This document shows, piece by piece, positions 11,372-29,018 of a DNA stretch of 64,000 nt. The stretch is taken from the IMG/VR virus record IMGVR_UViG_3300031857_000002, positions 186,001 through 250,000 of that record, one strand, 5' to 3'. Made by a program: the position numbers and the translations under genes. Within the stretch, counting starts at the first letter, position 1; the number at the start of each line of letters is the position of its first letter. The notes under the pieces were generated by a model. That model was not told the origin of the DNA, ran no database searches, and saw only the letters and a list, made by a program, of their open reading frames with translations.

Positions 11372-11401
11372 GGGGTTCCTTTGTAAAACTATTATTGTGT
11401 T

Positions 11402-11430: not shown

Positions 11431-11444
11431 CCAATACGAAATAT

Positions 11445-13061: not shown

Positions 13062-13079
13062 TACAGGCTCCTTGTTATT

Positions 13080-13631: not shown

Positions 13632-13650
13632 AATTGACTCCTTTTAATTT

Positions 13651-14397
13651 CTAGAACGGATTTAGTGCTGAACTGACTACACTGCCTGTGTTTACAATTG
13701 TAAGATTATTAGTTGAACTATCTTTTAAGAAATTCTCGTCGTTGGGAGTATTCAACAACAACTGTGTATTTGTAATAGCGGTGAGGTTAGTAGTAGGCGG
13801 AGTAAAGTATGTAGTACCCACAGATGTACCAAAAGCGTAAACTAATGATCCTTTTACAATTCTTATATTAGAGATATTACCATTAAATCTGTTGCTGCCG
13901 CTGTCTGAGCCAATGGTCCAAGGTAATGCACTTGACCCCATTTGTGCAGTTCCTACACCTGCACCTGTGGTGCTGGCCCTGCACACTCCATTAATAAACA
14001 AACTATAGCTAGTACCACTTCTCATAGTACAAATATGTTGCCAAGAATTTTGTGCCAGTGTTCCAGCAACTGACGTAATGCTGTTGAAAGGACTGCCTGT
14101 AGTAGGAGTATCGTTCCAGTTGGCTCGCACACGCCCGTCAGTGTTAGCTTGTCCTACAATCATGTAAGCGTTACCGTTTTGCATTACTAGCATATCGCTG
14201 GTACCACTAGCTAAGTTAGTTGGATACGCCCATAATTCTAGTGTAAAATCATTGGTGCCAAAGTTAAATCCAACGTCAGCAGGTGCTGTTAGATATTTTG
14301 CCGACGCACTACTGAATACTGCACTTCCAACTGGCACGAAGCTTTGTATTGTAATTCCTGCGCCTACTGAGATTCCTGGTCCTACTATGATTGCCAT
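13651..14397 (-). CDS. LamG/concanavalin A-like lectin-domain virion protein
   Basis: FTLELWAY, WQHICTMR, FNGNISNIRIVKG. Confidence 0.75.
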   Translation of the reverse strand: MAIIVGPGISVGAGITIQSFVPVGSAVFSSASAKYLTAPADVGFNFGTNDFTLELWAYPTNLASGTSDMLVMQNGNAYMIVGQANTDGRVRANWNDTPTTGSPFNSITSVAGTLAQNSWQHICTMRSGTSYSLFINGVCRASTTGAGVGTAQMGSSALPWTIGSDSGSNRFNGNISNIRIVKGSLVYAFGTSVGTTYFTPPTTNLTAITNTQLLLNTPNDENFLKDSSTNNLTIVNTGSVVSSALNPF

Positions 14398-14400
14398 ATT

Positions 14401-15120
14401 TTAATATCCAAATCTTGATTTATATTGTGTGTACAAGCCTTGTACATCTGACAAGGTCAATACACCGTTGTAAACTTTGACAAATCCTATGTCACCAGTT
14501 TGCGCTTCTGAACCCGATGATCTGCTGAACAATCTCAAGTTGTTGAAGCCACCGCCACTGGCATTGGTCACAGCAAATGATGTGCCCACTGGCTGTGAGC
14601 TTGTTGCTGTGTACAGTTGTCCCAGACTGGTTGAAGTGTTCCAAGTAGCCCAGCCAAAGTGCCAGGCAAGGTCCGCACCCGATGCTGGCAAGTTAACTGC
14701 GTAGTTGGGAAAGAATGTATCTGGGTTGCCGTTGTAAAGTCCCATGAGCCAGTCTTTTTGTGCTTCAACCTGTGTGTTCAGCAATCTGCCTGAGGCCGCA
14801 GTTGAACGCTTGTAGGCCATAAACACTGTGTAACTTTGCCCTGTGGTCCAGTTAGGCCCACCATAGATGTAGTCTGCACTTGTGGCACCTGAACCAGTCA
14901 TTCTAAAAACGCCACCATTGTCTGAGGCCCAGGCTATCCTACTGGTAGTATTGGCCACTGACAGTGTGTAGGTGCCAGTGGCATCCTTTGTGCCGTTTAC
15001 AGGCACAGCAGAGTAGTTGGCAGCGTCTAAGTCATATACCAACGTTGCTGATGGTGAGAATCCTTGAGTGATAGTTATACCACCACCTACCTGGACTCCT
15101 GCTCCGATTACTATTGGCAT
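14401..15120 (-). CDS. LamG-like lectin-domain virion protein
   Basis: Shares the N-terminal IxxGxGVxVGxGITI pattern with 13651-14397; LDAANY and IGFVKVYNGVLT. Confidence 0.65.
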   Translation of the reverse strand: MPIVIGAGVQVGGGITITQGFSPSATLVYDLDAANYSAVPVNGTKDATGTYTLSVANTTSRIAWASDNGGVFRMTGSGATSADYIYGGPNWTTGQSYTVFMAYKRSTAASGRLLNTQVEAQKDWLMGLYNGNPDTFFPNYAVNLPASGADLAWHFGWATWNTSTSLGQLYTATSSQPVGTSFAVTNASGGGFNNLRLFSRSSGSEAQTGDIGFVKVYNGVLTLSDVQGLYTQYKSRFGY

Positions 15121-15738
15121 TTAAACTCCCATTACATGCAGTGCATGTTCATAATGATGAATACGATCTTCTAGGCCAATGTATCCACCGTTGATGGCTC
15201 GAGTGAGTCCACGAATATCGCCTGCGTCAGCAAAGCGATTTAAATTGTTTTGTTCCCAGAACCAGCAGGCACTTTGTGCGGCGCCTTCAAATGTAGCAAG
15301 ATACTCAGCGGCTTCTTCTTCTGAAATGCCTAGACTGCCTGCAAAGAATGTGTAGTTGTCTTTGCCTGTTAACTGTATCAAGCCACGACCGCAGTAGCGC
15401 CAGCCATCTCCGGACTCTTCTGGACCGTTGCCCATGCGACTGGCATACACTCTGTTGGCAATCTTTTCTGGCTTGTTGGCATACTGTGCAGCCAAGGCAT
15501 CTGTGGGGAAATACTTGGGAAATACCTTTCGCAAACTAGCGGCTTTGTAGTTCAAGTTCTCTTTGATGAACACAAAGTTGCCTGACTCATGTGCGCACTG
15601 TGCAATAAAAGCTGCCACCCGCTGTGGTGTGTTGATTTCGTAGTCATCCAACAATTGTTCTAGTGCATCATACCAGTGATCAATGTGTGGATTTTTAACC
15701 ATTTGTTTTAGTTGTTCTCGTGTGAGTATCGTGCTCAT
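15121..15738 (-). CDS. Glycoside hydrolase family 19 endolysin
   Basis: AAFIAQCAHES, YCGRGLIQLTGKDNY, RAINGGYIGLEDR. Confidence 0.9.
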   Translation of the reverse strand: MSTILTREQLKQMVKNPHIDHWYDALEQLLDDYEINTPQRVAAFIAQCAHESGNFVFIKENLNYKAASLRKVFPKYFPTDALAAQYANKPEKIANRVYASRMGNGPEESGDGWRYCGRGLIQLTGKDNYTFFAGSLGISEEEAAEYLATFEGAAQSACWFWEQNNLNRFADAGDIRGLTRAINGGYIGLEDRIHHYEHALHVMGV

Positions 15739-17084: not shown

Positions 17085-17666
17085 TTAAAAGTCCATGTTA
17101 CATTGAGCTACAAGCTGCCAGTTTTTTAAATATCTGTACGCATCTGACAATCGATTGTGTTCCAGCTGATCCCGCATGAACACACTGAATTCATCAGGAT
17201 CCAAATCAATGTTGATCAGTTGATCAGCGTACCAGTCAACCCCGGTAGTAAAGTAATATTGCCAATGAAAATGCATTACCTTAATAAACACTGTGTTAAG
17301 TCCAAGATTTTCAATATCTTGCTGATGGTGCTGTACGCCGTCCACATTCCAATAACGTGCTAATGCGTCCACTAGATTGCTTTTTATCTTGATGATTTTG
17401 CGGTTGGGATATGTTTTTCTTATCAAATCTGAATTCACAGCGTGAGTATAAGCAATGGGAATACTGTCGTTGATCTCACCGTGATCACTCAGTGTTGGAT
17501 ACCGATATTGATTGGCCGGATTGTGATGTATCAAATGATCATGGCCAATCAATGGAACATTGTGATAATTGCCCTGAAGATTCAGATCAAAAGATTTGCC
17601 CAGCAAATGATGTATAAATCTAAAGCCGCCTGCTCCAGGAAAGTAACTTACAACAACAGGATCCAT
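17085..17666 (-). CDS. Hypothetical, sulfotransferase-like N-terminal loop (PGAGG-F family)
   Basis: VVVSYFPGAGGFRF start, similar to 24470-25357 and 33026-33655. Confidence 0.45.
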   Translation of the reverse strand: MDPVVVSYFPGAGGFRFIHHLLGKSFDLNLQGNYHNVPLIGHDHLIHHNPANQYRYPTLSDHGEINDSIPIAYTHAVNSDLIRKTYPNRKIIKIKSNLVDALARYWNVDGVQHHQQDIENLGLNTVFIKVMHFHWQYYFTTGVDWYADQLINIDLDPDEFSVFMRDQLEHNRLSDAYRYLKNWQLVAQCNMDF

Positions 17667-18724
17667 TAGTATACAAATAAATTCTGGTCACCCCGCTCGG
17701 GAAATAAATCAACTCTACTGTCATTGCGACGTATGTCCAAGGTTAGACAGTGCAGTCCACCGTCCCAGAATGTTCTTGTTCTAAATGGCATGGGGTGTGC
17801 GGTAATGCCATGCTGTTCTAGCGCACGAAATACACCTTCATTTTCCCCTACCATTAGCACGTTCTTTTCATCAATCACAAGACAGTTTAGTTCAAAGTAG
17901 GTTTCTGTGTAGTCGCCTACCCAGTCTTGTGCGTGTTTTATCACATGATCGTTAAATTTTGCCGAATTTGATACTCCGGGCAGCCACCATTTGCCGTTGT
18001 GCCATGGCCCTGTTCTACTGGATTTTTTTTTGTGGCGTAGAAATTCTGGTTGGTTTATGTTTATTTTTTCCCAGCCAGGGAATGTACGATCGTAATCGTC
18101 AAAGTACTCGCTGGTCAGTAATAATCCAGGCTTGAGCACAGCAAAACATCCATCCACATGTCCGCCATTGTTTAACATATGCAACCGATAATCTTTAAAA
18201 GTTTTTTGTATATATTCAACGTCTACATGCTCGTTGTGCCAATAACTGTCTAGGTAAAAGTCGCGACCCACACGTACAGTATTGGCACCGTTGATATGCC
18301 CGGCTCCAGGAATGTTTGGTCGATCAACTATGCGGCTGCCAAGGTCCTTGACATAGTCAGCAACAGCATCAGCCCAGGCTCTGTGATCCCAGGTTGCTCC
18401 AAACAATGTGTTGCCAAACACCAGGAAATGATCACGTGGTGTAATCATGGGCTTGCATAGTTGCCCTGCACTAGTGGGATGACCTTGCGGCATCAAAAAA
18501 TCTTCAATACGATCGTAACGGGGTCTGCGAACTTGCACACCGTGTTCTTCTAGTTTGCGTTGTATTACTGCAAGATCCTCTTGAGTCTTTTGAGTAATTT
18601 CATAAAAGATATCCTGTACTTCTGACTCTAGATGATCATAAAAATGTGCTGGATAACAGTTGCCCAACCATACTTCTTCAAGTCGGCCCCAGTTGGTGAA
18701 ACTGTTTATCTTTGGCAGCGTCAT
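17666..18724 (-). CDS. Amidinotransferase (glycine/inosamine-phosphate amidinotransferase family)
   Basis: NSFTNWGRLEEVWLG, ITPRD, GHVDG, FWDGGLHCLTLDIRR (catalytic Cys). Confidence 0.88.
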   Translation of the reverse strand: MTLPKINSFTNWGRLEEVWLGNCYPAHFYDHLESEVQDIFYEITQKTQEDLAVIQRKLEEHGVQVRRPRYDRIEDFLMPQGHPTSAGQLCKPMITPRDHFLVFGNTLFGATWDHRAWADAVADYVKDLGSRIVDRPNIPGAGHINGANTVRVGRDFYLDSYWHNEHVDVEYIQKTFKDYRLHMLNNGGHVDGCFAVLKPGLLLTSEYFDDYDRTFPGWEKININQPEFLRHKKKSSRTGPWHNGKWWLPGVSNSAKFNDHVIKHAQDWVGDYTETYFELNCLVIDEKNVLMVGENEGVFRALEQHGITAHPMPFRTRTFWDGGLHCLTLDIRRNDSRVDLFPERGDQNLFVY

Positions 18725-19515
18725 TCTAATCCCAGTTCTTTTCTAATAGCAGTGGCCGAAATTGAATGAGTTGCAGAATCAAATGATTCTTGTTCTATCT
18801 TGTAGCCCACGTCTCGACCGTAGGTGATATTTACTATGTTGGGCACAACTTGTATTTCGTATTGACCTTGATATAACATGTCTAGATCTCTACGTATATA
18901 ATTCCTCACCTGTTCTATAGCAAAGGGATTTGATCCTTGCCAGCCTTGACAATCTCTAATTTGAATTACCACTTGACCTGTTTTTGCAATGGCACGTTCA
19001 AACAACTTGCGATGTCCTGCATGCCATGGTTGCCAACGACCTAGCATTTGCACAGTTTCTTTCTGCCAATCGAATACAGGGCGTCTGCGATTATCTAAGA
19101 TATGTGCGGCCACAAACTCGCCCCACTTCTCACCATGCTGTTCAGTGATGCGGAAATCATATTGCTCAGGCGGAACGAATGCTTTATTAGTATCTTCGTA
19201 GCGGCCCTGATCAATGGTGTCAACCCATATGGTCCAGTCTGCTTTGAAATTGTTGCGCATGTCAACCAAGGGAGCCACAAAGTCACAGATCACATAGTCT
19301 ACATCTGTCATTGCATCTGCCAGTTCGCGCATACGTAAACTCTGACGTATACGGCCTGCTTCACTGAAATCCCAGTCGTTGTATTTTTTACGTACATCGT
19401 CGGCATTTAACCAACCCACACGTTTCTTTTCTGCTTGCAAGTGGTCTACAATGTGTTGTGCCAGGTATGTTTTGCCGGCCCCTGGCAGGCCCATGATTAA
19501 AATACGTTGTGTCAT
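18721..19515 (-). CDS. cysC: Adenylylsulfate kinase (CysC-like) fused to a C-terminal HxGH nucleotidyltransferase domain
   Basis: GLPGAGKT P-loop, LNADDVRK, DFSEAGRIRQ, ICDFVAP; then GRWQPWHAGH. Confidence 0.8.
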   Translation of the reverse strand: MTQRILIMGLPGAGKTYLAQHIVDHLQAEKKRVGWLNADDVRKKYNDWDFSEAGRIRQSLRMRELADAMTDVDYVICDFVAPLVDMRNNFKADWTIWVDTIDQGRYEDTNKAFVPPEQYDFRITEQHGEKWGEFVAAHILDNRRRPVFDWQKETVQMLGRWQPWHAGHRKLFERAIAKTGQVVIQIRDCQGWQGSNPFAIEQVRNYIRRDLDMLYQGQYEIQVVPNIVNITYGRDVGYKIEQESFDSATHSISATAIRKELGLE

Positions 19516-19520
19516 GCTAT

Positions 19521-19533
19521 TATTTACTAAGTA
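19521..19533. promoter_or_regulatory. Back-to-back TAAATA (minus) / TAAGTA (plus) late-type promoter pair
   Basis: Sequence CAT-gctat-TATTTA-c-TAAGTA-atttt-ATG; each motif is 5 nt from a divergent start codon. Confidence 0.55.
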
Positions 19534-19538
19534 ATTTT

Positions 19539-20666
19539 ATGAATGTATTAATTTTAACTCCGGACCGCGTTGGCAGCACTTTATTACAACGTGTGATCAC
19601 TGTGTACATGCAATCGCACACTTACAATCGCCCTGTGATTAACTTACACGAACTCACAAACGGATTAATGAAATACTACAGTCCTGTGTTCAATCAAGAA
19701 GTGCTGGGCAAACCAACTGACCGTCCTTGGGGATATTACCAGTCACTCGACGAAATACTGGAGCATTTAAACAGCACAGATCACTACAAGACCGCACGAT
19801 TGGCACATTATCATATTTTAAATCGTCAAGATCCATTGGCTAATCAGGTGCCTTTTTATCAATACCTAAATGATAACTTTTTTATAATCAGCGCCCAAAG
19901 GAAAAATCTACTAGAACATGCACTAAGTTGGTGTATTCAAGGACATTCAAAAAAGTTAAATGTTTACACACATCAAGAAAAGATTGATACATTTGCTGAC
20001 ATATATCAAAATAGAATCACAGTTGATGTGAATGTAATGATAACGTATCTCAACAAGTATGTGAACTACTTGAACTGGGTTGACAATCATTTTACAGTGA
20101 ATTCATACTTTGAATATGAAACACACATGCCTAAAATTGAAGAATATATACTGGGTTTGGATATATTTGGTGGACAACAAAAAAAATCATGGCATGACAC
20201 GTTTGGCATTGAGTTTCAAGACTGGAATCGATATCATTATCTTGCCAGTGACATGAGCGGCATAAGCAAACAGTTACCAAGTCCAGACAACTTAAAAATC
20301 ACGTTTGATTCTCAAGACCAGTTGGACAGTGTAGATCTAGTACCTGTGTTTAATAAAAATGCAATTCATAATAGTCTAAGCATTGGCGACAAACAGTTTT
20401 TAAAACAACATACTAGCAAATACATCAGCAGTTACAAAGCAATTGATGAGTTGGTTCAGCATAAGATAATGGTCACAGGCATTCCCATTAAACTGCAAAC
20501 CATGATGGAAAAAAGCCGACTGATACGCAATTTTGATCAATGCGCAGAAGCATACAATGACTGGGTCAAGCAACGTGGAATAGGCGATCCTTATACCAAT
20601 ACTGATATCAAGAAAATTGCACTAGATGAAATTAGCACCTGGCATTCGATGCCAAGGCTGGAATAA
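19539..20666 (+). CDS. Sulfotransferase-like protein
   Basis: TPDRVGSTLLQR (5'-PSB-like loop) and RKNLLEHALSW (3'-PB-like); start reassigned to MNVLIL. Confidence 0.55.
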   Translation: MNVLILTPDRVGSTLLQRVITVYMQSHTYNRPVINLHELTNGLMKYYSPVFNQEVLGKPTDRPWGYYQSLDEILEHLNSTDHYKTARLAHYHILNRQDPLANQVPFYQYLNDNFFIISAQRKNLLEHALSWCIQGHSKKLNVYTHQEKIDTFADIYQNRITVDVNVMITYLNKYVNYLNWVDNHFTVNSYFEYETHMPKIEEYILGLDIFGGQQKKSWHDTFGIEFQDWNRYHYLASDMSGISKQLPSPDNLKITFDSQDQLDSVDLVPVFNKNAIHNSLSIGDKQFLKQHTSKYISSYKAIDELVQHKIMVTGIPIKLQTMMEKSRLIRNFDQCAEAYNDWVKQRGIGDPYTNTDIKKIALDEISTWHSMPRLE

Positions 20667-21480
20667 TTTCGCATACTAACGCATTGCTAGTAAGAATATC
20701 ATAATGAAATCCATCACGAGCATAATCCAATTGCTCTGTCTGGATCACATTATCAAAATCTAGATTGTCCCCAGCTGGTGCCCAGGACGGAATAGCTGAA
20801 TGTACAATATTTCCCTGTAGTTGTTGCATGCACAATCGAGTATTAATAATGTCCTCGTCAGTGGTAGAATTAATGTGTTCTAACCTTAGTTCTTCACTAG
20901 ATGGGTCGATGCTTGACCAATCATGCAACTGCTTTATTTCTGTCTTTATCCAGGCCGGCAAATTATCAAAATCCTGAATACTTTTACAATCCGGCCAACT
21001 TACATCTTGTACAGATTTATAAAAATTTAAAAATCTTTCATTTAAAATGATGCTTGTGTCAAACTCTCGACGATGCATATAACTCCATTGGACTACTATA
21101 TTAGCCTGAGGAAACTGCGTTAAAATTGCAACTGCAATCCTGGCAATCCAGTTATTACTTGCTCCATCCATGCTGACATTTATTACACGACGCCTTAGGC
21201 GTTGCTGTAGCATATAAGGCCAGGTATGTTCAAGTGGGCTGCCTAGTCCCACAGTAAAACTATCTCCAACGCACCATATCACATCAGACAAATCATCAGG
21301 CCACTCTGCATCTCTAAATCCGCGACTGTTATAATGATATTCAACCTTGTGCGGGTACGACAAAAAATGTTCACGATTCAAGCACAACTCAAGACTATCC
21401 ATGCCTGACTCTAGCCAATGCTGGTTGACTCTTGACGGCAAATATAATTCAGGTAATAGACTTGGTTTTGTTATCGCCAT
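20632..21480 (-). CDS. SGNH/GDSL-like hydrolase-fold protein
   Basis: YNSRGFR, CVGDSFTVG, NVSMDGASN, C-terminal DGFH. Confidence 0.6.
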   Translation of the reverse strand: MAITKPSLLPELYLPSRVNQHWLESGMDSLELCLNREHFLSYPHKVEYHYNSRGFRDAEWPDDLSDVIWCVGDSFTVGLGSPLEHTWPYMLQQRLRRRVINVSMDGASNNWIARIAVAILTQFPQANIVVQWSYMHRREFDTSIILNERFLNFYKSVQDVSWPDCKSIQDFDNLPAWIKTEIKQLHDWSSIDPSSEELRLEHINSTTDEDIINTRLCMQQLQGNIVHSAIPSWAPAGDNLDFDNVIQTEQLDYARDGFHYDILTSNALVCEIIPALASNARC

Positions 21481-21482
21481 TT

Positions 21483-22127
21483 TTATAATGTGCTTAAAAA
21501 TAGTTTTGTCTTGTCAGTAATAATTCCAGTGATCTGCAGAGTGGCTCGGGGCACATGTCCTGCATTGGCGGTGGCGTGCGGTACGTTGATCCAGTCAAAA
21601 GTGCTGACATCCCCGGCCTGCCACCCTGTCCATGCATAGTTGCCATAACTCCAGAAATGTCCCTGCTGCCAGTCTGTGAGCTGTACAAAATAACGCACAA
21701 CCTGAGAAGGGTCAGTAGGCATCCATTTTTCCAGCTTGTCTAAGTGTAGATTCCATACTTGCCCAGGATGTTGCACATGTATTCTAGCCATGCTTTTTTC
21801 CAGGCCAAATTGATCAGCAATGTGTTGAAACACAGGATCAAGATTGTAGTTCAAGTTAGTGACCACATAGTCACGTCCGTAACCTTGTTGCTCTAGATCG
21901 TAGTCTTCTTGATCGTATTCTTCTGTGGCACGTTTTAATGGGTCCGAGTCGCGACCACGAGTGCGCCAGGTCACAGGTGCAGATGCAGTTATAGCCGCAG
22001 ATAATTCTTCTGCCCATGTAGGTTGAATGTGTCCTAGGTGTTGTACTGTGTCCCATCGTGGATCTATTACGCTATTATCAAAATGATATTGACTTCTTTG
22101 TTGAGTTATTGCCCAAGCTGATTTCAT
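21483..22127 (-). CDS. 2OG-Fe(II) oxygenase-like (cupin) protein
   Basis: PGQVWNLHLD (HxD) and distal PHATANAG His; start MKSAWA at 22127. Confidence 0.65.
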   Translation of the reverse strand: MKSAWAITQQRSQYHFDNSVIDPRWDTVQHLGHIQPTWAEELSAAITASAPVTWRTRGRDSDPLKRATEEYDQEDYDLEQQGYGRDYVVTNLNYNLDPVFQHIADQFGLEKSMARIHVQHPGQVWNLHLDKLEKWMPTDPSQVVRYFVQLTDWQQGHFWSYGNYAWTGWQAGDVSTFDWINVPHATANAGHVPRATLQITGIITDKTKLFLSTL

Positions 22128-22744
22128 ATTACTGTTACCTTTATGTCTGACGCTGTGTAGTCTTGATAGTATTCTGTTGCTGGAACTTGAATACCAACAG
22201 TTCTGGCCAGTTGTCTGTTGGTTTCCACAACTGTGGCAGGCCATTCACGGGCCGCACGACGATTGCCCTCATTTTCTCTGCGTATGCATTCGGCCATTTG
22301 ACGCAGGTCTCGGTAATAGTCCCGGTACAATGGATATGTTATTTTAAACTCCCCACATTTGACCCACCATCCTAGGCAAGCATCATCTGTGCGATCAATC
22401 AGCACAATAGGACAATCAGGCCAGGTTTTTTTGATATAATCGATATGATATCCAAACACATGGCTTTTGATAATACGTACACCTGTGCCACTAAATGGTG
22501 CATCAAACTCTGCTTCGTTCTGTTCTCGAGTGTATTGATCCAGGTGTTCAAAATGATCACCAAATTCCATGGCTGGTCCCCAGTACACTCCCATGTGTAA
22601 CAATTCCATTGTGCCCGAAGCGTCATGACGATATGTTCTGGCTTCTGAGTAATCAGTTGAGTCTACGTCGGCGCTGTAGTAAATGTTTTTTACTACGGAA
22701 CTCCATTTAGAGCCCGGGGCTCCACTTACAAAAATATATTTCAT
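22124..22744 (-). CDS. Sulfotransferase/P-loop-like hypothetical protein
   Basis: IFVSGAPGSKWSSV, IIKSH, IVLIDR pattern; start MKYIFV at 22744. Confidence 0.5.
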   Translation of the reverse strand: MKYIFVSGAPGSKWSSVVKNIYYSADVDSTDYSEARTYRHDASGTMELLHMGVYWGPAMEFGDHFEHLDQYTREQNEAEFDAPFSGTGVRIIKSHVFGYHIDYIKKTWPDCPIVLIDRTDDACLGWWVKCGEFKITYPLYRDYYRDLRQMAECIRRENEGNRRAAREWPATVVETNRQLARTVGIQVPATEYYQDYTASDIKVTVI

Positions 22745-23700
22745 TCTGGTCGGATCCTTCTGGCAATGGGTTGCCACGTTTGTTGTAGTCGGGCCATGCT
22801 AGCACGTACACCTGCTGGCGAGTGTTCTTCAGTGGTGATGTACATCATGTTTTCTCGAAACCTTGCTCCTGCTGCTGTTGAGCGTATGGCAGGTACAAAC
22901 TGTTCAGCATACCATTTCTGTATGTCTTGTGGAGTACCTGGTGGTAGTACCATGTTCCAGCAGCCGTGTATGCTGAGTCCTGGTGCTGCCTTGCTCATTA
23001 ACGGCGCAGATTCTAATCCTGGCAAGGGTCGTGTGTCAGCGATACCAATCAACTTGAGCTTGCCTGCAATCACATGCGGATATCCCACTGCCACAGGAGT
23101 AACGCCAAATTCCACATGCCCGCCCATGACATCTAATAGTGCCTGAGCAGGACCTTTGTACATGGCTGTTTCAACTCGATCACCGCCAGCAACATTTAGC
23201 TTGTCTTTAAGATATTCCACTGCTAATTTATGACCCCCTCCGCCAATGGCTATAGTAATGGGCCTTTCTTTCTTTCTAATGGCTGCCACCAGTTCTTCGG
23301 GCGTGTTGATACGACTGCTGGGGTGTGCCCAGAATGCTAGTGGACTACGTGCAATATTAGCAATGGGTTCTAGATCCATGGGATTATATTTAATTACCTT
23401 AGGATACCATACTTCAGGAGTGACCCAATTTGACTGACACGCAGGCACCGCAATAGTGTGTCCGTCTGCAGGTGTAGTCACAAAGTGATTGATAGCAATG
23501 TTGCCATCAGCACCCGGTCTGTGTTCAGACACAAATTTGGCACCGGTTGACTTTTCTACAATATCTGCTACAATACGAAATGATATTTCATTTCCGGCAC
23601 CTGGTCCATTGGGGAATATAACAGTGACAGGTTTGGTGGGTTGCCAGGCCCAGGCTGATGAGGCAAACAAGGCCACGGCAAGAAATTTTAGTGTACGCAT
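22741..23700 (-). CDS. Bug/TctC tripartite tricarboxylate transporter substrate-binding protein
   Basis: Signal peptide, KPVTVIFPNGPG, EHRPGADGNIA, MYKGPAQALLDVMGGHVE, LPPGTP. Confidence 0.88.
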   Translation of the reverse strand: MRTLKFLAVALFASSAWAWQPTKPVTVIFPNGPGAGNEISFRIVADIVEKSTGAKFVSEHRPGADGNIAINHFVTTPADGHTIAVPACQSNWVTPEVWYPKVIKYNPMDLEPIANIARSPLAFWAHPSSRINTPEELVAAIRKKERPITIAIGGGGHKLAVEYLKDKLNVAGGDRVETAMYKGPAQALLDVMGGHVEFGVTPVAVGYPHVIAGKLKLIGIADTRPLPGLESAPLMSKAAPGLSIHGCWNMVLPPGTPQDIQKWYAEQFVPAIRSTAAGARFRENMMYITTEEHSPAGVRASMARLQQTWQPIARRIRPE

Positions 23701-23751
23701 AAGACTCCTTTAAATACATTATAAATTCTAAGTTATATATCAAAATTTACT

Positions 23752-24480
23752 ATGAACACAAAAATTTTCAACCTTTTACAAAAAAATCTACAACTTGCGT
23801 TTAATTTACCCAAGTACGCCGCAATCACAATTGACGCAGATACCAATGTACACAGCCTGCCCTGGACTCCTGCTCGCTACAGCAAGTTCAAAGACGCTGT
23901 GGAAGCAGAACTCAGTCTGCCTTGTGAGTATCGTGGCACCTTGCGAGAGATTGCGGATGACCTTAGTGAACGCTACACACATAGATTCTTTGCGGAAATA
24001 TGGAAGCCAAGAACAGGCGACTATGAACACACAGGCTGGGAACTAGCTGAAGAAATCAACAAACTGAACCCGGAACGTGTGCTTGATGTGGGCTGTGGCT
24101 ATCATCCTTTTAAAGGGCGCATTCACAATCTTGTAGGAATTGATCCTTACAATAACTGCGCAGATTATGAAGTAGACATCTTAGACTACAAGGTAAAACC
24201 ACAATCGCACGATGTGATCATTGCCCTGGGATCAATTAACTTTAATTCACGAGACGAAATCGAATCACGTTTTGCACACTGTGTTTCATTACTAAAGCCT
24301 GGCGGTAAATTCTTTTTGCGAGCCAATCCTGGCATTACCCACAAGACAGGACCTTATGTGGAGATCTTTTCGTGGACTTTTGAAGTTGTGAATGAATTTG
24401 CAGAAACATACAATTTAAATCTAGACACCTTTAAGAAAGATGCCAATGACCGATTGTATTTTGTGTATACTAAACGCTAG
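23752..24480 (+). CDS. Class I SAM-dependent methyltransferase with extra N-terminal domain
   Basis: VLDVGCG motif I, VGIDP, LKPGGKFF. Confidence 0.8.
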   Translation: MNTKIFNLLQKNLQLAFNLPKYAAITIDADTNVHSLPWTPARYSKFKDAVEAELSLPCEYRGTLREIADDLSERYTHRFFAEIWKPRTGDYEHTGWELAEEINKLNPERVLDVGCGYHPFKGRIHNLVGIDPYNNCADYEVDILDYKVKPQSHDVIIALGSINFNSRDEIESRFAHCVSLLKPGGKFFLRANPGITHKTGPYVEIFSWTFEVVNEFAETYNLNLDTFKKDANDRLYFVYTKR

Positions 24481-25357
24481 GAACCCAAGGTTCAGAATCA
24501 CAGCGTAGCAGTGCTTGTTGTATCACGGGCTGTGCATCCACTGTGCTCAAGGCAATGAATTCATCAATGGGCATTTTGAGATAGCGTTCGGCCATGGACA
24601 CATTGCGGTCATGATACTGTTGCATCATACTCACAAGATGCTGGGACGAGTCATAATCAATACCAAAGTGCTGGCACACACGAGCATGCTCTGATTCGCT
24701 GTCTCCAAACATCAATTCAGACAGATCAATGTTGAATAGTGATTGGTAGTCCAGTGGCAAAAACCAGTGCTGATACTCGTTCTGTATCCTGTTGATTACC
24801 GGGATATTTTCCTTGTGGTCACGCCAGGAGTCAACCTCAAATTGATAAAACCATTCTCGTCCGTTGATGTAGTGTTTAAAATTTTCCACGGTGTCATGGT
24901 CTTGATCAAATTGACTTGACAAGTGCTGTGCCCATCCTGATTCTGGGGCAGATGGCAAGTATCTTTCCACGGTAAATCTAAAAAGACGCATTTTGAGCCA
25001 CATCAGTACAAAAAAGAATTTCTTATGTTCGTCAGCACAGGTTATAAAGGCTTTTTGTGCTGGGTCGGCAAACACAATGCCCGAAAATGATCTATTGTCA
25101 GACTGTAAATTGCGTTGGCAGTAAGGGTGAGTGATCAGAAACAACTTGCGGTCTGTGCCCTTGGGAGAAAATTCAAATGTGTTGTTTAGTATATGAACGT
25201 ATCTGTTGTTCTTTAGTTGTTTCACAGTAGAAGGTATGCAGCCAGGATGTTGACTCAGCCAGTAGGCCATGAACTCTCCGCCAAACCCTCCAGGATAAAT
25301 CAACAAATATGCCGATTCAGGACGCACCAGTTGCGTGGTCAATTTCTGATCTAACAT
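24470..25357 (-). CDS. Hypothetical (PGGFGG-F family)
   Basis: LLIYPGGFGGEFMAYWL near the N-terminus. Confidence 0.5.
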   Translation of the reverse strand: MLDQKLTTQLVRPESAYLLIYPGGFGGEFMAYWLSQHPGCIPSTVKQLKNNRYVHILNNTFEFSPKGTDRKLFLITHPYCQRNLQSDNRSFSGIVFADPAQKAFITCADEHKKFFFVLMWLKMRLFRFTVERYLPSAPESGWAQHLSSQFDQDHDTVENFKHYINGREWFYQFEVDSWRDHKENIPVINRIQNEYQHWFLPLDYQSLFNIDLSELMFGDSESEHARVCQHFGIDYDSSQHLVSMMQQYHDRNVSMAERYLKMPIDEFIALSTVDAQPVIQQALLRCDSEPWVPSV

Positions 25358-25360
25358 GTA

Positions 25361-25708
25361 TCATTTGCCAGCGGCCCGTAAATTAGCGCCGTTGTTGAAG
25401 CTGGGGCTGTAAGGACTGTTGCCCTGTATGTTGCCTTTACGTGCTGACCATTCATAGCCTGCACGATGCCCTGAACAGTCCTTGGTACAGGGCGAGCCCA
25501 GGAAGCTGAGTTCATCCAGCTGTTCTTCCTGTAGCTTGGGACGTATTTCTACTATGGTGGCATTGTGATAGTCAGCCCAGGCACGTGCGGCTGTTTCACT
25601 AGGAAACGTTCTACGCCACTGTTCACGCTGATCTCTGCGGTTGTACGCATACCCCCAGGCTTCTACAGGCGTGCCGGCAATTTCTTCAAACAGCATCAGC
25701 AGTTCCAT
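25361..25708 (-). CDS. Hypothetical, probable internal head protein
   Basis: LQE/LDE sites and CTKDCSGHRAGYEW module. Confidence 0.55.
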   Translation of the reverse strand: MELLMLFEEIAGTPVEAWGYAYNRRDQREQWRRTFPSETAARAWADYHNATIVEIRPKLQEEQLDELSFLGSPCTKDCSGHRAGYEWSARKGNIQGNSPYSPSFNNGANLRAAGK

Positions 25709-27153
25709 TTGCGCAGAGCCAGAGCCTTGCGTGTGGGTTTGCCATTGGGCTTTTTCATTGGACCTTTAACACCGCCCATTCTTGCGCAGAAACTCTTGCG
25801 ACGCTTGGCAGCTTTGGATCCAGGCTTGAGTTTTGAAGGCTTGGTTGTGACTGCTGTTTGTAGTTTAGAACCAGGATTCTCTCTACGATAGCTGGCCACA
25901 CCCTTGGCGTTGAGTCCGCCCTTGGCGCTCTTGCCTTCTTTACGACGCCAGGCTGCTGTTTCGTACAGCATGTGGTCATCCATGGCTTCAAATGTTTCCC
26001 ACACAAGATCAACACTTACGCCTTTCTTTCGAGCCATTTCCTCGGCTAACTGATCCATGGCTTCAAACATCTCATCCACTTCAGGATCTACTTCGTCTGA
26101 TGCTTCCTCTGAGTACATGTAATCCCACACACTAACCAACATTGACTTGGCCACTGCAATCTTTTCTTGACACCATTCAGGCAAGTTATCACCTGAGTTG
26201 ATTAGATCATCCAAGCCGTCAACTGCGCGATCAAGAGTTTCTAGGTTGTTTTCTACCATGCCTGCTTCGTCATCGTACTCGGGATTGTAGTCTTCTGCCA
26301 TGCCTTGTTGACCCGACATATCCATCAGTTGTCGAACATAGAAATTGTAATAACCACGACGGCTGTTGTATTCTCTATCGCCTAGCACAGTCTTTAATGC
26401 AGCCACAGCATCACTTGCTTCTGAACCCTGCATTATTTTTAATGCGTCAGTCACAAGTGAATCAACTCTTTGTGAACTTTCTGTCACACCTTTGTTGTGT
26501 GCTTTCCAGGCTGTGGCATAGGCAATTGATTTTTCTTTATCAGACAACTTGCCATCTTTGGCATAGCCTTTTTTGATATGCTTGACCATGCGTTCTGCTT
26601 TGGCACCTGGAGGTGCGGCTTCGTCTACACCGGCCTTTTTCTTTTTGGCAATGGCAATAGCAGCCTGTTGTGCAGGATTTGCGGCTTCCGCTACACTTTG
26701 CTTGGATTTAATAATATTTCTAATGTCTGTAGCATTTACCCAACGTTTGACTTCACTGCGTGGGTAATATGTCTTTGATCCATTGTTAGACGTAACACCT
26801 TCTAACTTTTTGGGGAAATTACCTATATGCAACACAAGTGTTCGTAATTCATTTGAAGTAATACCTAGTTTTTCTGCAATCTCTTGAAAGCTCCAGGTAG
26901 GCTCTCTCCAGTCTGGGTGTTTCATATTTCCTGGAATATGGATTCCTCTGAGCTCGGGGGTAGAATTAGTACTAGATGTAGATGGGGAATATGTACTATC
27001 AAAACCTTCTTCTACTGACTCAGCAGGCACACAGTTGTTCACACGCACACCACCCTTGACCTTGGTTTTAGGGTTGCCAATCTTTTTGCCTGTCCAACAT
27101 TTGGGATCCAAGCGGACTTTTTCTTCAGAAACAATAAAGTCATTAAATTTCAT
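25696..27153 (-). CDS. Modular probable internal head polyprotein (HTH-like module; C-terminal DUF6321-like module)
   Basis: Starts MKFNDFIVSE; modules bounded by VEE/VAE/VDE/VTE/MAE/LYE; SFQEIAEKLGITSNEL HTH; basic C-terminus RRKSFCARM...ALRKWNC. Confidence 0.65.
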   Translation of the reverse strand: MKFNDFIVSEEKVRLDPKCWTGKKIGNPKTKVKGGVRVNNCVPAESVEEGFDSTYSPSTSSTNSTPELRGIHIPGNMKHPDWREPTWSFQEIAEKLGITSNELRTLVLHIGNFPKKLEGVTSNNGSKTYYPRSEVKRWVNATDIRNIIKSKQSVAEAANPAQQAAIAIAKKKKAGVDEAAPPGAKAERMVKHIKKGYAKDGKLSDKEKSIAYATAWKAHNKGVTESSQRVDSLVTDALKIMQGSEASDAVAALKTVLGDREYNSRRGYYNFYVRQLMDMSGQQGMAEDYNPEYDDEAGMVENNLETLDRAVDGLDDLINSGDNLPEWCQEKIAVAKSMLVSVWDYMYSEEASDEVDPEVDEMFEAMDQLAEEMARKKGVSVDLVWETFEAMDDHMLYETAAWRRKEGKSAKGGLNAKGVASYRRENPGSKLQTAVTTKPSKLKPGSKAAKRRKSFCARMGGVKGPMKKPNGKPTRKALALRKWNC

Positions 27154-27671
27154 TATCTTGCCTTTTTGGGTTGTTGTGCAGGTTGCACAGCATGCGGTAC
27201 ATTTTTGTACACACGTCGAGCAGGATCGTACACAGTCCGTAACGGACCGGCTCCTGCTAGTTTTTTCATACGTGACAAGGCAGCATCAAATGCATCAGCA
27301 TCCATGTTGCCTACTTTTTCCTTGGACTCGTCAAACCAGTCGTCAGATTCATCGTCAGTCATGTCATCTGCTGGGTCTGAATCCGTCATGTCATCGGCAT
27401 CGCGATCATTGTAGTAGTCCCAGTCACTGTCGTAGTTTTGTGGATCGGGTGCAATGGGTGGTCGAGCGTCTTCTGGCATCATGCCGTGAGTTTTAACATG
27501 TGTATCTAGGTCATCACGCTGTTTAGACAGTTGTTGAATCAGTTGTTTGTTGCCAGTTTGTATTGCTTGTCTAAGTTTTTCTTGAATAGCATCTGCTTGA
27601 TCATGATAGTCATTCATTCGCATTGGCCCAGGAACTTTGACATCTTCGTCTATAATGTGATTGATTTTCAT
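27153..27671 (-). CDS. Probable internal head protein
   Basis: Starts MKINHIIDE; acidic middle; LSRMKKLAG motif. Confidence 0.6.
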   Translation of the reverse strand: MKINHIIDEDVKVPGPMRMNDYHDQADAIQEKLRQAIQTGNKQLIQQLSKQRDDLDTHVKTHGMMPEDARPPIAPDPQNYDSDWDYYNDRDADDMTDSDPADDMTDDESDDWFDESKEKVGNMDADAFDAALSRMKKLAGAGPLRTVYDPARRVYKNVPHAVQPAQQPKKAR

Positions 27672-29008: not shown

Positions 29009-29018
29009 GATATGTTAT

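What the first reader, a model, noticed from the sequence alone, without database searches (positions are those of the whole stretch)
17085..25357. Phage-encoded tailoring cluster (PAPS supply, sulfotransferase-like, amidino, hydroxylase, methyl, SGNH, Bug)
Seen: ten contiguous enzyme-like genes: amidinotransferase, APS kinase fusion, two sulfotransferase-like ORFs, two PG(A/G)xG-F ORFs, an SGNH-like ORF, a 2OG-Fe-like ORF, a SAM methyltransferase and a Bug binding protein. A glycosyltransferase and radical SAM enzymes lie elsewhere in the window. Knowledge: sulfotransferases need PAPS made by APS kinase, and amidinotransferases move the amidino group from arginine. Inference: a pathway making a sulfated/amidinated/methylated product, such as a virion glycan, a host-surface modification or a small molecule. 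I cannot assign the product.
Basis: partly seen in the sequence, partly recalled or inferred. Interest (0 to 1): 0.68.

Follow-up and report, generated by a model that had tools for sequence, protein, structure and literature searches.

The report
Sulfotransferase tailoring module of freshwater jumbo phages
A 320-kb lake-water phage carries a gene block, kept in its relatives, that pairs an APS-kinase-type donor-making enzyme with two sulfotransferase-fold enzymes, a hydroxylase, a methyltransferase, an esterase and an exported binding protein, so it probably sulfates and further decorates a still unknown molecule during infection.

Summary
Eight of the ten enzyme labels hold up with tools.

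- **Sulfotransferase folds:** O4 (19539-20666) is a Pfam orphan, but its model (pLDDT 94.5) has a sulfotransferase fold closest to Stf0 (Z 11.3). O7 (22124-22744) is closest to tyrosylprotein sulfotransferases (Z 11.2), and 29 of 34 family members touch Sulfotransfer_3.
- **Other enzymes:** O3 is an APS-kinase-like domain fused to an NMNAT-type HxGH nucleotidyltransferase. O2 belongs to the AGAT/StrB1/SxtG amidinotransferase family. O8 is a Bug/TctC binding protein. O5, O6 and O9 have SGNH, 2OG-Fe(II) and SAM-methyltransferase signatures.
- **Unassigned:** O1 and O10 remain without a fold.

Only seven genes (O3-O9) form a module conserved in eight distinct relatives, all pieces of 320-350 kb freshwater phages. 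O1, O2 and O10 are additions specific to this strain at the edges.

"PAPS supply" is only half shown. The genome has no ATP sulfurylase, and O3 homologues occur in phages that show no sulfotransferase nearby.

My best reading is a PAPS-type group-transfer tailoring pathway with an unknown acceptor (about 0.55). This is a new variant of a known kind and is of moderate interest.

The parts
17085..17666 (-). O1, 193 aa. Glycine-rich N-terminal loop (PGAGGF). Fold unknown. Strain-specific accessory gene whose start shares a base with the stop of O2.
   Evidence: No Pfam, PHROG or NCBIfam family. No relative in viral contigs. Absent from the modules of relatives; one 30% match inside a 656-aa ORF elsewhere in G003. 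hhalign links to O10 and O7 are not significant.
17666..18724 (-). O2, 352 aa. Amidinotransferase-family enzyme (AGAT/StrB1/SxtG type). It is a third paralogue, found in the module only in this strain.
   Evidence: phmmer against PDB: SxtG 2.1e-11, AGAT 3e-11, StrB1 1.3e-9. The C-terminal Cys and the HxD are kept, but Asn145 stands where the alignment places the first Asp of SxtG's DAAD stretch. From memory, that Asp corresponds to the AGAT triad residue Asp254. Paralogues lie at genome 113082-114101 and 280953-281978. Relatives carry only the distant copies, at 31-33% identity.
18721..19515 (-). O3, 264 aa. N-terminal APS-kinase-like P-loop domain (about residues 1-150) fused to a C-terminal NMNAT-type HxGH nucleotidyltransferase domain (about 154-264). 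Proposed maker of the 3'-phospho-nucleotide donor.
   Evidence: Pfam APS_kinase 43.8 bits against a cut-off of 21.1, covering profile positions 5-94 of 152. The profile search of PDB gives mostly APS kinases, best 1.9e-8, and NMNAT at 3.9e-5. phrog_10255 at 5e-48. It is the most conserved module protein, 68-92% identical across relatives. It is single-copy in every relative tested.
19539..20666 (+). O4, 375 aa. Stf0-like sulfotransferase fold with a C-terminal helical extension. The family has no Pfam model.
   Evidence: AF2 pLDDT 94.5, pTM 0.93. Foldseek top hits are Stf0 1tex and 3rnl. VIA Z 11.3 to 1tex (196 residues, rmsd 4.1), and nearly all of the top 50 are PAPS sulfotransferases. All named Atlas neighbours are Stf0, Sulfotransfer_3 or NodH. 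No Pfam hit in 58 family members. In the 19-sequence alignment A1, P8, D9, G12, S13, R121 and S130 are invariant. In the deeper 58-sequence A3, only P8, G12 and S130 stay at 90% or more.
20632..21480 (-). O5, 282 aa. SGNH/GDSL-type hydrolase or acyltransferase.
   Evidence: Lipase_GDSL_2 E 6e-4. NCBIfam LA_2486 SGNH esterase 7e-5. Five of five homologues hit GDSL models, one over the cut-off. GDS, GASN and DGFH blocks are visible in the sequence.
21483..22127 (-). O6, 214 aa. Probable Fe(II)/2-oxoglutarate oxygenase (cupin fold).
   Evidence: Invariant H128-x-D130, H184 or H191, and R194 across nine sequences. The nearest named Atlas cluster is Asp_Arg_Hydrox, 0.96 with 208 of 256 shared features. 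No HMM or PDB sequence hit. A paralogue lies next to an amidinotransferase paralogue.
22124..22744 (-). O7, 206 aa. Sulfotransfer_3-type sulfotransferase, structurally nearest to tyrosylprotein sulfotransferases.
   Evidence: AF2 pLDDT 82.7. VIA: TPST1 Z 11.2 (165 residues, rmsd 3.4), TPST2 10.3-10.5, CurM and OLS sulfotransferase domains 9.1-9.7, NMP kinases at 8.6 or below. 29 of 34 family members hit PF13469, best 1.9e-6. The BFVD top hit is a 57%-identical 'Sulfotransferase family' protein of an uncultured phage.
22741..23700 (-). O8, 319 aa. Bug/TctC-family periplasmic solute-binding protein with an N-terminal signal-peptide-like segment.
   Evidence: Pfam TctC 1.7e-23, 84 bits against a cut-off of 27. 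Present in 6 of 8 relatives' modules. A second paralogue lies at genome 129076-129990.
23752..24480 (+). O9, 242 aa. Class I SAM-dependent methyltransferase.
   Evidence: Methyltransf_25, _23 and _11 at E 3e-4 to 9e-3, below their cut-offs. Two of three homologues give the same hits. Motif I (VLDVGCG) is in the sequence. 52-85% identical in all eight relatives.
24470..25357 (-). O10, 295 aa. Glycine-rich loop (YPGGFGGEF). Fold unknown. A rare accessory gene.
   Evidence: Only 16 homologue clusters. No Pfam or PDB hit for the family. Language-model neighbours are unnamed viral clusters; the nearest named ones are DUF2972 (0.95) and viral Sulfotransfer_1 clusters (0.94). Absent from relatives' modules, where a second SGNH-like gene holds this position. 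One 27% match lies elsewhere in G001.

Best explanation
The feature is a conserved seven-gene auxiliary tailoring module (O3-O9) of a lineage of 320-350 kb freshwater jumbo phages. In this strain it is extended by three accessory genes, O1, O2 and O10.

Proposed mechanism:
1. O3 makes or tops up a 3'-phosphorylated nucleotide donor. Its APS-kinase-like domain phosphorylates the 3'-OH of a nucleoside 5'-phospho-X compound. That compound is most likely host-made APS, which would give PAPS. The fused NMNAT-type nucleotidyltransferase domain either forms that nucleotidyl-X intermediate or serves an unrelated nucleotide reaction.
2. The two sulfotransferase-fold enzymes, O4 (Stf0-like) and O7 (TPST/Sulfotransfer_3-like), transfer the activated group, most likely sulfate, to two positions or two acceptors.
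3. O6 (Fe/2OG oxygenase) could create or alter a hydroxyl group. O9 methylates. O5 (SGNH) removes or moves an acyl group.
4. O8 is exported to the host periplasm and feeds a carboxylate precursor into a host tripartite tricarboxylate transporter.

What is shown: the folds and families, the gene order, and the conservation. What is inferred: the donor, the order of steps, and that the genes act on one product.

The acceptor is unknown. I lean towards a sugar or glycan on the host envelope or on the virion. A protein or peptide acceptor is the close second.
For: - **Folds:** O4 and O7 have sulfotransferase folds.
- **O3 kinase domain:** it scores above the Pfam APS_kinase cut-off, and a profile search of PDB returns mostly APS kinases. 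My reading of the alignments is that the Arg, the FS pair and the F-V/I-x-P stretch line up with their APS-kinase counterparts.
- **Only one such gene:** O3 is the only APS-kinase-type gene in the genome.
- **Synteny:** O4, O5, O6, O7 and O9 are adjacent in all eight distinct relatives, at 40-90% aa identity, even though the gene order is shuffled. O3 is in the module in 7 of 8, and O8 in 6 of 8.
- **Close packing:** O8, O7, O6 and O5 follow one another with abutting or near-abutting stop and start codons. O3-O2-O1 have overlapping ones.
- **Variable genes in relatives are the same kind of enzyme:** a further P-loop/sulfotransferase-like family, a second SGNH-like gene, a cupin, a di-iron oxygenase and Peptidase_C26.
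- **Leaning towards a sugar acceptor:** O4's nearest named folds are Stf0 and NodH. The genome holds other sugar-tailoring genes, namely a UDP-glucose dehydrogenase and a carbamoyltransferase. The module abuts the lysis and ConA-like lectin genes.
Against: - The genome has no ATP sulfurylase or CysD, so APS would have to come from the host.
- O3 matches only the first 94 of 152 APS_kinase profile positions. It has N-A-D where the APS kinases in the alignments have D-G-D.
- O3 homologues with the same two domains occur in Xylella, Stenotrophomonas and Xanthomonas phages beside MazG and COG3236, with no sulfotransferase annotated nearby.
- In one relative O3 lies 34 kb from the module.
- O4 has no HMM-level sulfotransferase membership. 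O7 stays below Pfam's cut-off.
- P-loop kinases score only 2-3 Z units below the sulfotransferases.
- O7's nearest folds (TPST) and O6's nearest family (Asp/Arg hydroxylase) point to a protein acceptor rather than a sugar.
- No experiment or raw-read expression data exist. Contigs in RNA libraries do not prove transcription.
Confidence: 0.55

Rival explanations
1. The block is not one pathway. It is a hypervariable island of independent auxiliary genes next to the lysis cassette. On this reading O3 is a NadR-like or other nucleotide-cofactor enzyme (kinase plus NMNAT-type adenylyltransferase). It could serve NAD or ADP-ribose metabolism or counter-defence. The Bug protein would be a separate uptake gene, and the sulfotransferases would use host PAPS on their own.
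For: O3's C-terminal domain matches NMNATs (2qjt 3.9e-5, MJ0541). Its GRWQPWHAGH motif resembles, from memory, the archaeal NMNAT signature. Full-length O3 homologues in Sano, Salvo and Bacata-type phages lie next to a COG3236 (NADAR-type) gene and MazG, with no sulfotransferase annotated nearby. In one relative O3 is 34 kb from the module. Gene order inside the block is shuffled and the accessory content varies.
Against: O3 lies inside the block in 7 of 8 relatives despite the shuffling. Its kinase domain matches APS kinases specifically, not nicotinamide-riboside kinases. The remaining core genes are adjacent in all eight relatives.
Confidence: 0.2
2. The module transfers a group other than sulfate from a PAPS-like donor, as in the Campylobacter jejuni O-methyl-phosphoramidate pathway. 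There a cytidylyltransferase and Cj1415 (recalled as an APS-kinase homologue) help build 3'-phospho-CDP-amidate. Cj1421 and Cj1422 are needed to attach the group, and methyltransferase-like genes lie beside them. Here O3 would unite the nucleotidyltransferase and the 3'-kinase, O4 and O7 would be the transferases, and O9 the methyltransferase.
For: The logic of a nucleotidyltransferase followed by a 3'-kinase fits O3's two domains better than plain APS phosphorylation does. Cj1415-1418 make CDP-phosphoramidate 3'-phosphate, and loss of Cj1421 or Cj1422 removes the MeOPN groups (PMC11800397). O10's nearest named language-model cluster is DUF2972 from Campylobacterota. Three relatives carry a Peptidase_C26/GATase gene in the module, the enzyme class I recall for Cj1417. 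A methyltransferase is a core gene.
Against: This genome has no DUF2972 match, no PEP-utilizer domain of the kind I recall for the glutamine kinase, and no Peptidase_C26. So two of the four donor-making activities are missing here. O4 and O7 match bona fide sulfotransferases.
Confidence: 0.08
3. The P-loop and sulfotransferase-fold proteins act on phage DNA as base kinases or transferases in a hypermodification pathway. The oxygenase, methyltransferase and amidinotransferase would then tailor the appended group.
For: O7's BFVD list includes a 5-hmdU DNA kinase of Bacillus phage SP10 (E 0.015) and several nucleotide kinases. NMP kinases score Z 8-8.6. Radical SAM enzymes lie elsewhere in the window. 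From my own knowledge, Campylobacter phages that carry an amidinotransferase have modified DNA.
Against: Sulfotransferases outrank the kinases for both models. Neither O4 nor O7 has a canonical Walker A GK[ST]. The block lies beside lysis genes, not replication genes. An exported binding protein does not fit a DNA pathway.
Confidence: 0.07

Closest known systems
Bacterial PAPS-supply plus sulfotransferase systems: rhizobial NodPQ/NodH, Xanthomonas RaxPQ/RaxST, mycobacterial CysC/Stf0 (my own knowledge of these systems)
   Same: An APS-kinase-type enzyme is encoded together with PAPS-type sulfotransferases that decorate an exported glycolipid, glycan or peptide. O4's nearest folds are Stf0 and NodH-type clusters. 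O7's nearest are TPST-type, the class I recall for RaxST.
   Different: There is no ATP sulfurylase partner. The kinase is fused to an NMNAT-type nucleotidyltransferase and lacks a match to the C-terminal third of the APS_kinase model. O4 is too diverged for any Pfam sulfotransferase model. The system is encoded by a phage and joined to an oxygenase, a methyltransferase, an SGNH enzyme and a Bug protein.
Campylobacter jejuni MeOPN capsule-modification genes Cj1415-Cj1422
   Same: Both combine a kinase that 3'-phosphorylates an NDP-X donor, a nucleotidyltransferase, transferases and methyltransferase-like genes in one cluster (PMC11800397). That Cj1415 is an APS-kinase homologue is my recollection.
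   Different: There is no glutamine kinase or amidohydrolase in this genome and no DUF2972 match. The transferases here match true sulfotransferases.
APS-kinase-like genes of other phages: Ralstonia phiRSL1 'adenosine 5'-phosphosulfate kinase', RsoM2USA, and phrog_10255 'kinase' of the Sano/Salvo group
   Same: O3's kinase domain is 34-46% identical to the RSL1 and RsoM2USA proteins. The full two-domain protein is 36-40% identical to the Sano-group proteins.
   Different: The records of those phages annotate no sulfotransferase nearby. RSL1 and RsoM2USA match the kinase domain only.
Phage amidinotransferase clusters: Campylobacter CP220-type phages and Synechococcus phage S-SCSM2R
   Same: O2 and its paralogues are homologous to them, at E 1e-10 to 7e-25 by tblastn. 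They too sit among tailoring genes: 2OG-Fe oxygenases, KdsA/B and a glycosyltransferase in one, and a BtrN-type radical SAM in the other.
   Different: Only this strain places an amidinotransferase in the sulfotransferase module. At residue 145 O2 has Asn, where the CP20 and S-SCSM2R proteins have Asp.

Membership tests
PAPS-dependent sulfotransferase superfamily (O4) | Sulfotransferase alpha/beta fold | tested here: met
   AF2 pLDDT 94.5. Stf0 Z 11.3, and nearly all of the top 50 are sulfotransferases. All named Atlas neighbours are sulfotransferases.
PAPS-dependent sulfotransferase superfamily (O4) | Match to a curated sulfotransferase sequence model | tested here: not met
   None of 58 family members hits any Pfam sulfotransferase model. 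The profile search of PDB finds nothing.
PAPS-dependent sulfotransferase superfamily (O4) | 5'-phosphosulfate loop and 3'-phosphate Arg...Ser motif | tested here: inconclusive
   In the 19-sequence alignment A1, T7-P8-D9-x-x-G12-S13 and R121...S130 are invariant. In the deeper 58-sequence A3, only T7, P8, G12 and S130 stay at 90% or more. The loop is one residue longer than PKxGTT and has no fixed Lys or Arg. Their placement on the nucleotide was not checked in 3D.
Sulfotransfer_3 / TPST-like (O7) | Fold and family model | tested here: inconclusive
   The fold is met: TPST1 Z 11.2. 29 of 34 members hit PF13469, best E 1.9e-6, but O7 itself scores 15 bits against a cut-off of 27.
Sulfotransferases (O4, O7) | PAPS-dependent sulfuryl transfer | not testable with these tools
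   This needs an enzyme assay.
APS kinase (CysC), O3 N-terminal domain | Family model over its cut-off, with APS kinases as the closest solved relatives | tested here: met
   PF01583 43.8 bits against a cut-off of 21.1 and 44.6 bits in the genome scan. In PDB, 2yvu scores 1.9e-8 and most other hits are APS kinases.
APS kinase (CysC), O3 N-terminal domain | Full-length domain with the D-G-D motif and the C-terminal part of the model | tested here: not met
   Only model positions 5-94 of 152 align. N-A-D replaces the D-G-D seen in the aligned APS kinases. NCBIfam equivalog cut-offs are far from reached.
ATP sulfurylase, O3 C-terminal domain or elsewhere in the genome | Match to PF01747 or to CysD (PF01507) | tested here: not met
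   The whole genome gives no match at E <= 1. The HxxH region aligns to 2gks with a negative score.
HxGH nucleotidyltransferase (NMNAT/cytidylyltransferase-like), O3 C-terminal domain | HxGH and ISxTxIR motifs, and family hits | tested here: met
   WHAGH and ISATxIR are invariant or nearly so. NMNAT 2qjt scores 3.9e-5. CTP_transf_like and NCBIfam NMNAT models hit at 1e-3 to 3e-6, below their cut-offs.
Amidinotransferase (AGAT/StrB1/SxtG), O2 | Sequence membership and the Cys-His-Asp triad | tested here: inconclusive
   Membership is met at E 2e-11. Cys and His-x-Asp are conserved, but Asn145 stands where the alignment places the first Asp of SxtG's DAAD stretch. CP20, S-SCSM2R and one own paralogue have Asp there. 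That this is the AGAT triad Asp254 is my recollection.
Fe(II)/2-oxoglutarate oxygenase, O6 | HxD/E...H facial triad plus Arg, on a cupin fold | tested here: inconclusive
   The motif is invariant in nine sequences. The nearest named Atlas cluster is Asp_Arg_Hydrox at 0.96.
SGNH/GDSL hydrolase, O5 | Blocks I, III and V (GDS, GxN, DxxH) and the family model | tested here: inconclusive
   The blocks are visible in the sequence. O5 scores 20.7 bits, below its cut-off. All five homologues hit, one over the cut-off.
Bug/TctC solute-binding protein, O8 | Family model over its cut-off, and an export signal | tested here: met
   PF03401 84 bits against a cut-off of 27. A hydrophobic N-terminal segment ending in A-W-A is seen in the sequence. 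No signal-peptide predictor was available.
Campylobacter MeOPN pathway | DUF2972 transferase, glutamine kinase (PEP-utilizer domain) and a C26-type amidohydrolase | tested here: not met
   This genome has no PF11186, PF00391 or PF07722 match. Peptidase_C26 is present only in three relatives.

The most novel reading that the evidence does not exclude
O3 is a minimal two-domain donor synthase of 264 aa. Its NMNAT-type domain would form a nucleotidyl-X intermediate, acting either as a previously unseen compact sulfate adenylyltransferase or on a phospho-substrate. Its APS-kinase-like domain would then 3'-phosphorylate that intermediate. The phage would thus make PAPS, or a non-canonical PAPS-like donor, independently of the host. 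O4 and O7 would use it to place an unusual anionic group on a virion or host-envelope macromolecule, in a phage lineage that is widespread in lakes.
Probability: 0.15. Interest if true: 0.8.

Novelty: new variant of a known kind. Interest (0 to 1): 0.55.

Why it matters
Sulfation by phages is almost unstudied. This module is conserved in a lineage of 320-350 kb phages, and DNA near-identical to this stretch is held in lake-water, freshwater and other metagenomes from at least ten studies. Its two sulfotransferase families have thousands of metagenomic members.

If the module sulfates a host-surface or virion molecule, it would be a new way for phages to alter receptors, exclude competitors or change particle properties. 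If the freshwater host turns out to lack an APS kinase, which I did not test, the phage kinase would be what makes PAPS chemistry possible during infection.

Two further points have practical value.
- O4 defines a sulfotransferase-fold family that no sequence model recognises.
- The O3 fusion, also found in cultured Xylella and Stenotrophomonas phages, is an easily testable candidate for a new donor-making enzyme.

Tried and rejected
**Searches that found nothing**
- Megablast of the block against cultured phages: no match.
- Single-sequence and profile searches of PDB for O4, O6, O7 and O10: nothing usable.

**Attempts to link the P-loop-like families to one another**
- Profile-profile comparison of O7 with O4, and of O10, O1 and the 'TGPQGSGNH' family with each other and with O4 and O7: all at probability 33% or lower, mostly below 6%.
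- I therefore do not claim that the two PGxGG ORFs are related to each other or to the sulfotransferases.

**Other checks**
- O6 against the 2OG-Fe oxygenases next to the Synechococcus phage amidinotransferase: no phmmer hit.
- The promoter and terminator scan showed nothing beyond chance for terminators and no clear operon boundaries.
- Three metatranscriptome libraries hold contigs of relatives across the block. These are assembled contigs and may include DNA, so I do not count them as proof of expression.

**Readings I considered and set aside**
- The MeOPN idea was tested and weakened.
- ATP sulfurylase was sought and not found.
- The Raushel-laboratory papers on Cj1415 and Cj1416 are not held. 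What I say about those enzymes' folds is from memory.

**Not run**
- No complex prediction was run, because no specific binding claim is made.

Full report
**Setting**

The window is bases 186001-250000 of a single 320,175-bp IMG/VR virus record that CheckV rates 92% complete. PHROG hits to tail-fibre, virion, radical-SAM and Clp-type ATPase families fit a jumbo tailed phage. DNA near-identical to the stretch 18721-24480 is held in runs labelled lake-water, freshwater or, oddly, fungus metagenome. Seventeen runs from ten studies hold half or more of its sampled words. No cultured phage matches at the DNA level.

**The observation**

Ten ORFs of 193-385 aa fill 17085-25357. Alignments with relatives refine three starts:
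- O4 begins at the ATG at 19539. All homologues start with the same residues.
- O6 begins at 22127.
- O7 begins at 22744.

With these starts, O8, O7, O6 and O5 follow one another on the minus strand with abutting or near-abutting stop and start codons. O3, O2 and O1 do the same with overlapping codons. O4 and O9 lie on the plus strand, convergent with O5 and O10. These are real genes: O4 has 1739 and O7 has 5432 homologue clusters in metagenomes.

**What each gene is**

- **O2** matches solved amidinotransferases: SxtG 2.1e-11, AGAT 3e-11, StrB1 1.3e-9. It keeps the C-terminal catalytic Cys and the His-x-Asp. Asn145 stands where the alignment places the first Asp of SxtG's DAAD stretch, which from memory corresponds to the AGAT triad residue Asp254. 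The CP20 and S-SCSM2R homologues have Asp there.
- **O3** has two domains.
  - Residues 5-92 score 43.8 bits on Pfam APS_kinase, against a cut-off of 21.1. A profile of eight orthologues finds mostly APS kinases in PDB, best 1.9e-8. The Arg, the FS pair and the F-V-A-P stretch line up with their APS-kinase counterparts, but the aligned D-G-D reads N-A-D. Only positions 5-94 of the 152-position model align.
  - Residues 154-264 carry an HxGH motif and an ISxTxIR motif. They match NMN adenylyltransferases (2qjt 3.9e-5, MJ0541).
- **O4** has no hit in Pfam, PHROGs, NCBIfam or PDB sequences. Neither do 57 other members of its family.
  - An exhaustive search finds only 257 clusters at 50% identity.
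  - Its AlphaFold model is very confident, pLDDT 94.5.
  - The model matches sulfotransferases: Stf0 leads Foldseek, and VIA-align gives Z 11.3 over 196 residues at rmsd 4.1. Nearly all of the top 50 are PAPS-dependent sulfotransferases.
  - Every named neighbour in the ESM Atlas is Stf0, Sulfotransfer_3 or NodH-like.
  - In the 19-sequence alignment, an N-terminal T-P-D-x-x-G-S loop and an R121...S130 pair are invariant. They resemble the 5'-phosphosulfate and 3'-phosphate motifs, but only part of this holds in the deeper alignment.
- **O7** scores only 15 bits on Sulfotransfer_3, but 29 of 34 family members hit that model, best 1.9e-6.
  - Its model (pLDDT 82.7) is nearest to tyrosylprotein sulfotransferases, Z 10.3-11.2.
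  - Next come the CurM and OLS sulfotransferase domains and mycobacterial Stf1/Stf9. NMP kinases reach 8.6 at most.
  - The best viral structure hit is a 57%-identical 'Sulfotransferase family' protein of an uncultured phage.
- **O5** has the GDS, GASN and DGFH blocks of SGNH hydrolases and weak GDSL hits. These recur in all five homologues tested, one of them over the cut-off.
- **O6** has no HMM hit. It has an invariant HxD...H...R pattern, and its nearest named language-model cluster is Asp_Arg_Hydrox, 0.96 with 208 shared features.
- **O8** is a clear TctC/Bug protein at 84 bits, with a signal-peptide-like N-terminus.
- **O9** has weak class I methyltransferase hits and motif I.
- **O1 and O10** share only a glycine-rich loop.
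  - O10 has 16 homologue clusters, and its family has no Pfam or PDB hit.
  - Its language-model neighbours are unnamed viral clusters. DUF2972 and Sulfotransfer_1-bearing clusters are the nearest named ones.
  - O1 has no detectable relatives in viral contigs.
  - hhalign does not link O1, O10, O4 or O7 to one another.

**Conservation**

Eleven loci from relatives were recovered, eight of them distinct. They include two complete 347-kb and 353-kb genomes with terminal repeats.
- O4, O5, O6, O7 and O9 lie together in all eight, at 40-90% amino-acid identity. The flanks are always the same: a Clp-type ATPase, DnaJ, holin and GH19 on one side, and a PhoH-side block on the other.
- O3 is in the block in seven. 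In the eighth it lies 34 kb away. It is single-copy in all five records searched.
- O8 is present in six.
- Gene order inside the block is shuffled: O3 and O5 move.
- The gaps hold variable genes of the same general kind:
  - a 208-236 aa family with a P-loop-like 'TGPQGSGNH' motif, in 7 of 8;
  - a second SGNH-like gene at the place O10 occupies here, in 6 of 8;
  - a cupin, a ferritin-like di-iron protein and a Peptidase_C26/GATase, in three;
  - two proteins with GGxGGF loops.
- O1, O2 and O10 are in no relative's block. Relatives keep amidinotransferases at other loci at 31-33% identity; these presumably correspond to this genome's two other paralogues. Only isolated distant matches to O1 and O10 were found.

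The conserved unit is therefore O3-O9. O2 and O1, appended to O3, and O10 are additions specific to this strain.

**Mechanism**

The best-supported reading is a group-transfer tailoring pathway built around two sulfotransferase-fold enzymes and a donor-making enzyme.

O3's kinase domain is the only APS-kinase-type gene in the genome. No ATP sulfurylase or CysD is present. If the donor is PAPS, APS must therefore come from the host, or from the NMNAT-type domain acting in an unprecedented way.

The pairing of a nucleotidyltransferase with a 3'-kinase recurs in PAPS synthase, in CoA synthase and in the Campylobacter MeOPN donor pathway (own knowledge; PMC11800397). It suggests that O3 makes a 3'-phospho-nucleotidyl-X donor in two steps.

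I tested the MeOPN alternative directly. This genome has no DUF2972, no PEP-utilizer domain of the kind I recall for the glutamine kinase, and no C26 amidohydrolase. That alternative is therefore unlikely here.

The oxygenase, methyltransferase and SGNH enzyme are plausible tailoring steps. The exported Bug protein is a plausible importer of a precursor. None of these roles is shown.

**The acceptor**

The evidence divides.
- For a sugar or glycan:
  - O4's nearest folds are Stf0 and NodH.
  - An SGNH enzyme is in the core.
  - The lysis and ConA-like lectin genes are adjacent.
  - Other sugar-tailoring genes are in the genome.
- For a protein or peptide: O7's nearest folds are TPSTs, and O6's nearest family is Asp/Arg hydroxylases.

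I lean to a glycan, without confidence.

**Caveats on the O3 link**

Full-length O3 homologues at 36-40% identity occur in Xylella, Stenotrophomonas, Xanthomonas and Clavibacter phages. In the Sano and Bacata records they sit beside MazG and a COG3236 (NADAR-type) gene, with no sulfotransferase annotated nearby. O3 may therefore serve nucleotide or NAD-type chemistry, and its place in the block may be only partly functional. I give that rival 0.2.

A DNA-hypermodification role is a minor rival. Kinases such as a 5-hmdU DNA kinase appear low in the fold lists.

**Expression**

Three metatranscriptome libraries contain assembled contigs of related sequence across O3-O9. One is a 3.5-kb contig. 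Such libraries can carry DNA and contigs show no strand, so this is not evidence of transcription.

**Verdict**

Sulfotransferase folds and neighbourhood conservation hold. The cluster is seven conserved genes plus three local additions. The PAPS supply is incomplete, and the product is unknown.
- This is a new variant of a known kind: PAPS-type sulfation systems and phage auxiliary tailoring clusters.
- The most testable novelties are the Pfam-orphan O4 family and the O3 fusion.

No alternative genetic code was used. No step needed referral.

Noticed in passing
G000 genome 107000-120000 (L024; outside the window): A second amidinotransferase paralogue (genome 113082-114101, 32% identical to O2) lies among a radical SAM/SPASM enzyme, another radical SAM enzyme, a NodU/CmcH-type carbamoyltransferase and two unknown proteins of about 370 aa. 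Campylobacter phage CP20 also has its amidinotransferase near a 'BtrN' radical SAM gene. This may be a separate aminocyclitol- or sugar-like tailoring cluster.
   Followed up: partly
G000 genome 275000-288000 (L023; outside the window): A third amidinotransferase paralogue (280953-281978) is adjacent to a 178-aa paralogue of O6 and to a UDP-glucose/GDP-mannose dehydrogenase. A UvdE endonuclease and a metallophosphoesterase lie nearby. An amidinotransferase paired with a 2OG-Fe oxygenase also occurs in Synechococcus phage S-SCSM2R, next to KdsA/KdsB.
   Followed up: partly
window 12498-15738: The gene set directly before the module looks like a lysis cassette: a GTA-type 3-TM holin, a DUF4337 protein, two ConA-like lectin (Laminin_G_3) proteins and a weak GH19 hit (22 bits, below the cut-off) that may be the endolysin.
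   Followed up: partly
window 9110-12227: The phage encodes a 774-aa Clp-type two-AAA+ ATPase (phrog_4871, named 'ATP-dependent protease') followed by a 260-aa gene. The homologues of these two genes in relative L003 carry Clp_N/AAA_2/ClpB_D2-small and DnaJ/DnaJ_C domains. Both are conserved in all relatives with enough flank.
   Followed up: no
window 25361-29456: About 4 kb between O10 and the next conserved gene is absent from all relatives. It holds a 485-aa protein with a C-terminal DUF6321 domain, a 446-aa protein with a weak DUF4407 hit, and small ORFs. It looks like a strain-specific insertion.
   Followed up: no
L008:13291-15850, L010:11091-13688, L012:16177-18094: Three relatives carry a four-gene accessory set in the module: a 'TGPQGSGNH' P-loop-like protein, a Cupin_2 protein, a Peptidase_C26/GATase and a ferritin-like (AurF/RNR-small-like) di-iron protein. 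This suggests a different tailoring branch from the one in this strain.
   Followed up: partly
L002:5565-6738 (Xylella phage Sano), L021:4565-5741 (phage Bacata): Full-length O3 homologues in cultured Casjensviridae phages sit directly after a small gene and near MazG and a 'cysteine dioxygenase'. Bacata's record annotates the small gene as COG3236/GTP cyclohydrolase II (NADAR-type). This hints at a nucleotide or ADP-ribose-related role for the fusion in those phages.
   Followed up: partly
L003:6479-7423: A relative encodes a carbonic anhydrase (Pfam Carb_anhydrase) between the holin and the module. It has no counterpart in this window.
   Followed up: no
G000 genome 129076-129990 (outside the window): There is a second Bug/TctC paralogue, 26% identical to O8. 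The phage therefore encodes two exported solute-binding proteins.
   Followed up: no
window 4895-6013 and 30759-31499: A radical SAM enzyme (phrog_14086) lies at 4895-6013. The gene at 30759-31499 is 70% identical to an L003 gene with a PhoH domain. The conserved radical SAM gene that follows PhoH in L003 was not located in this window.
   Followed up: no
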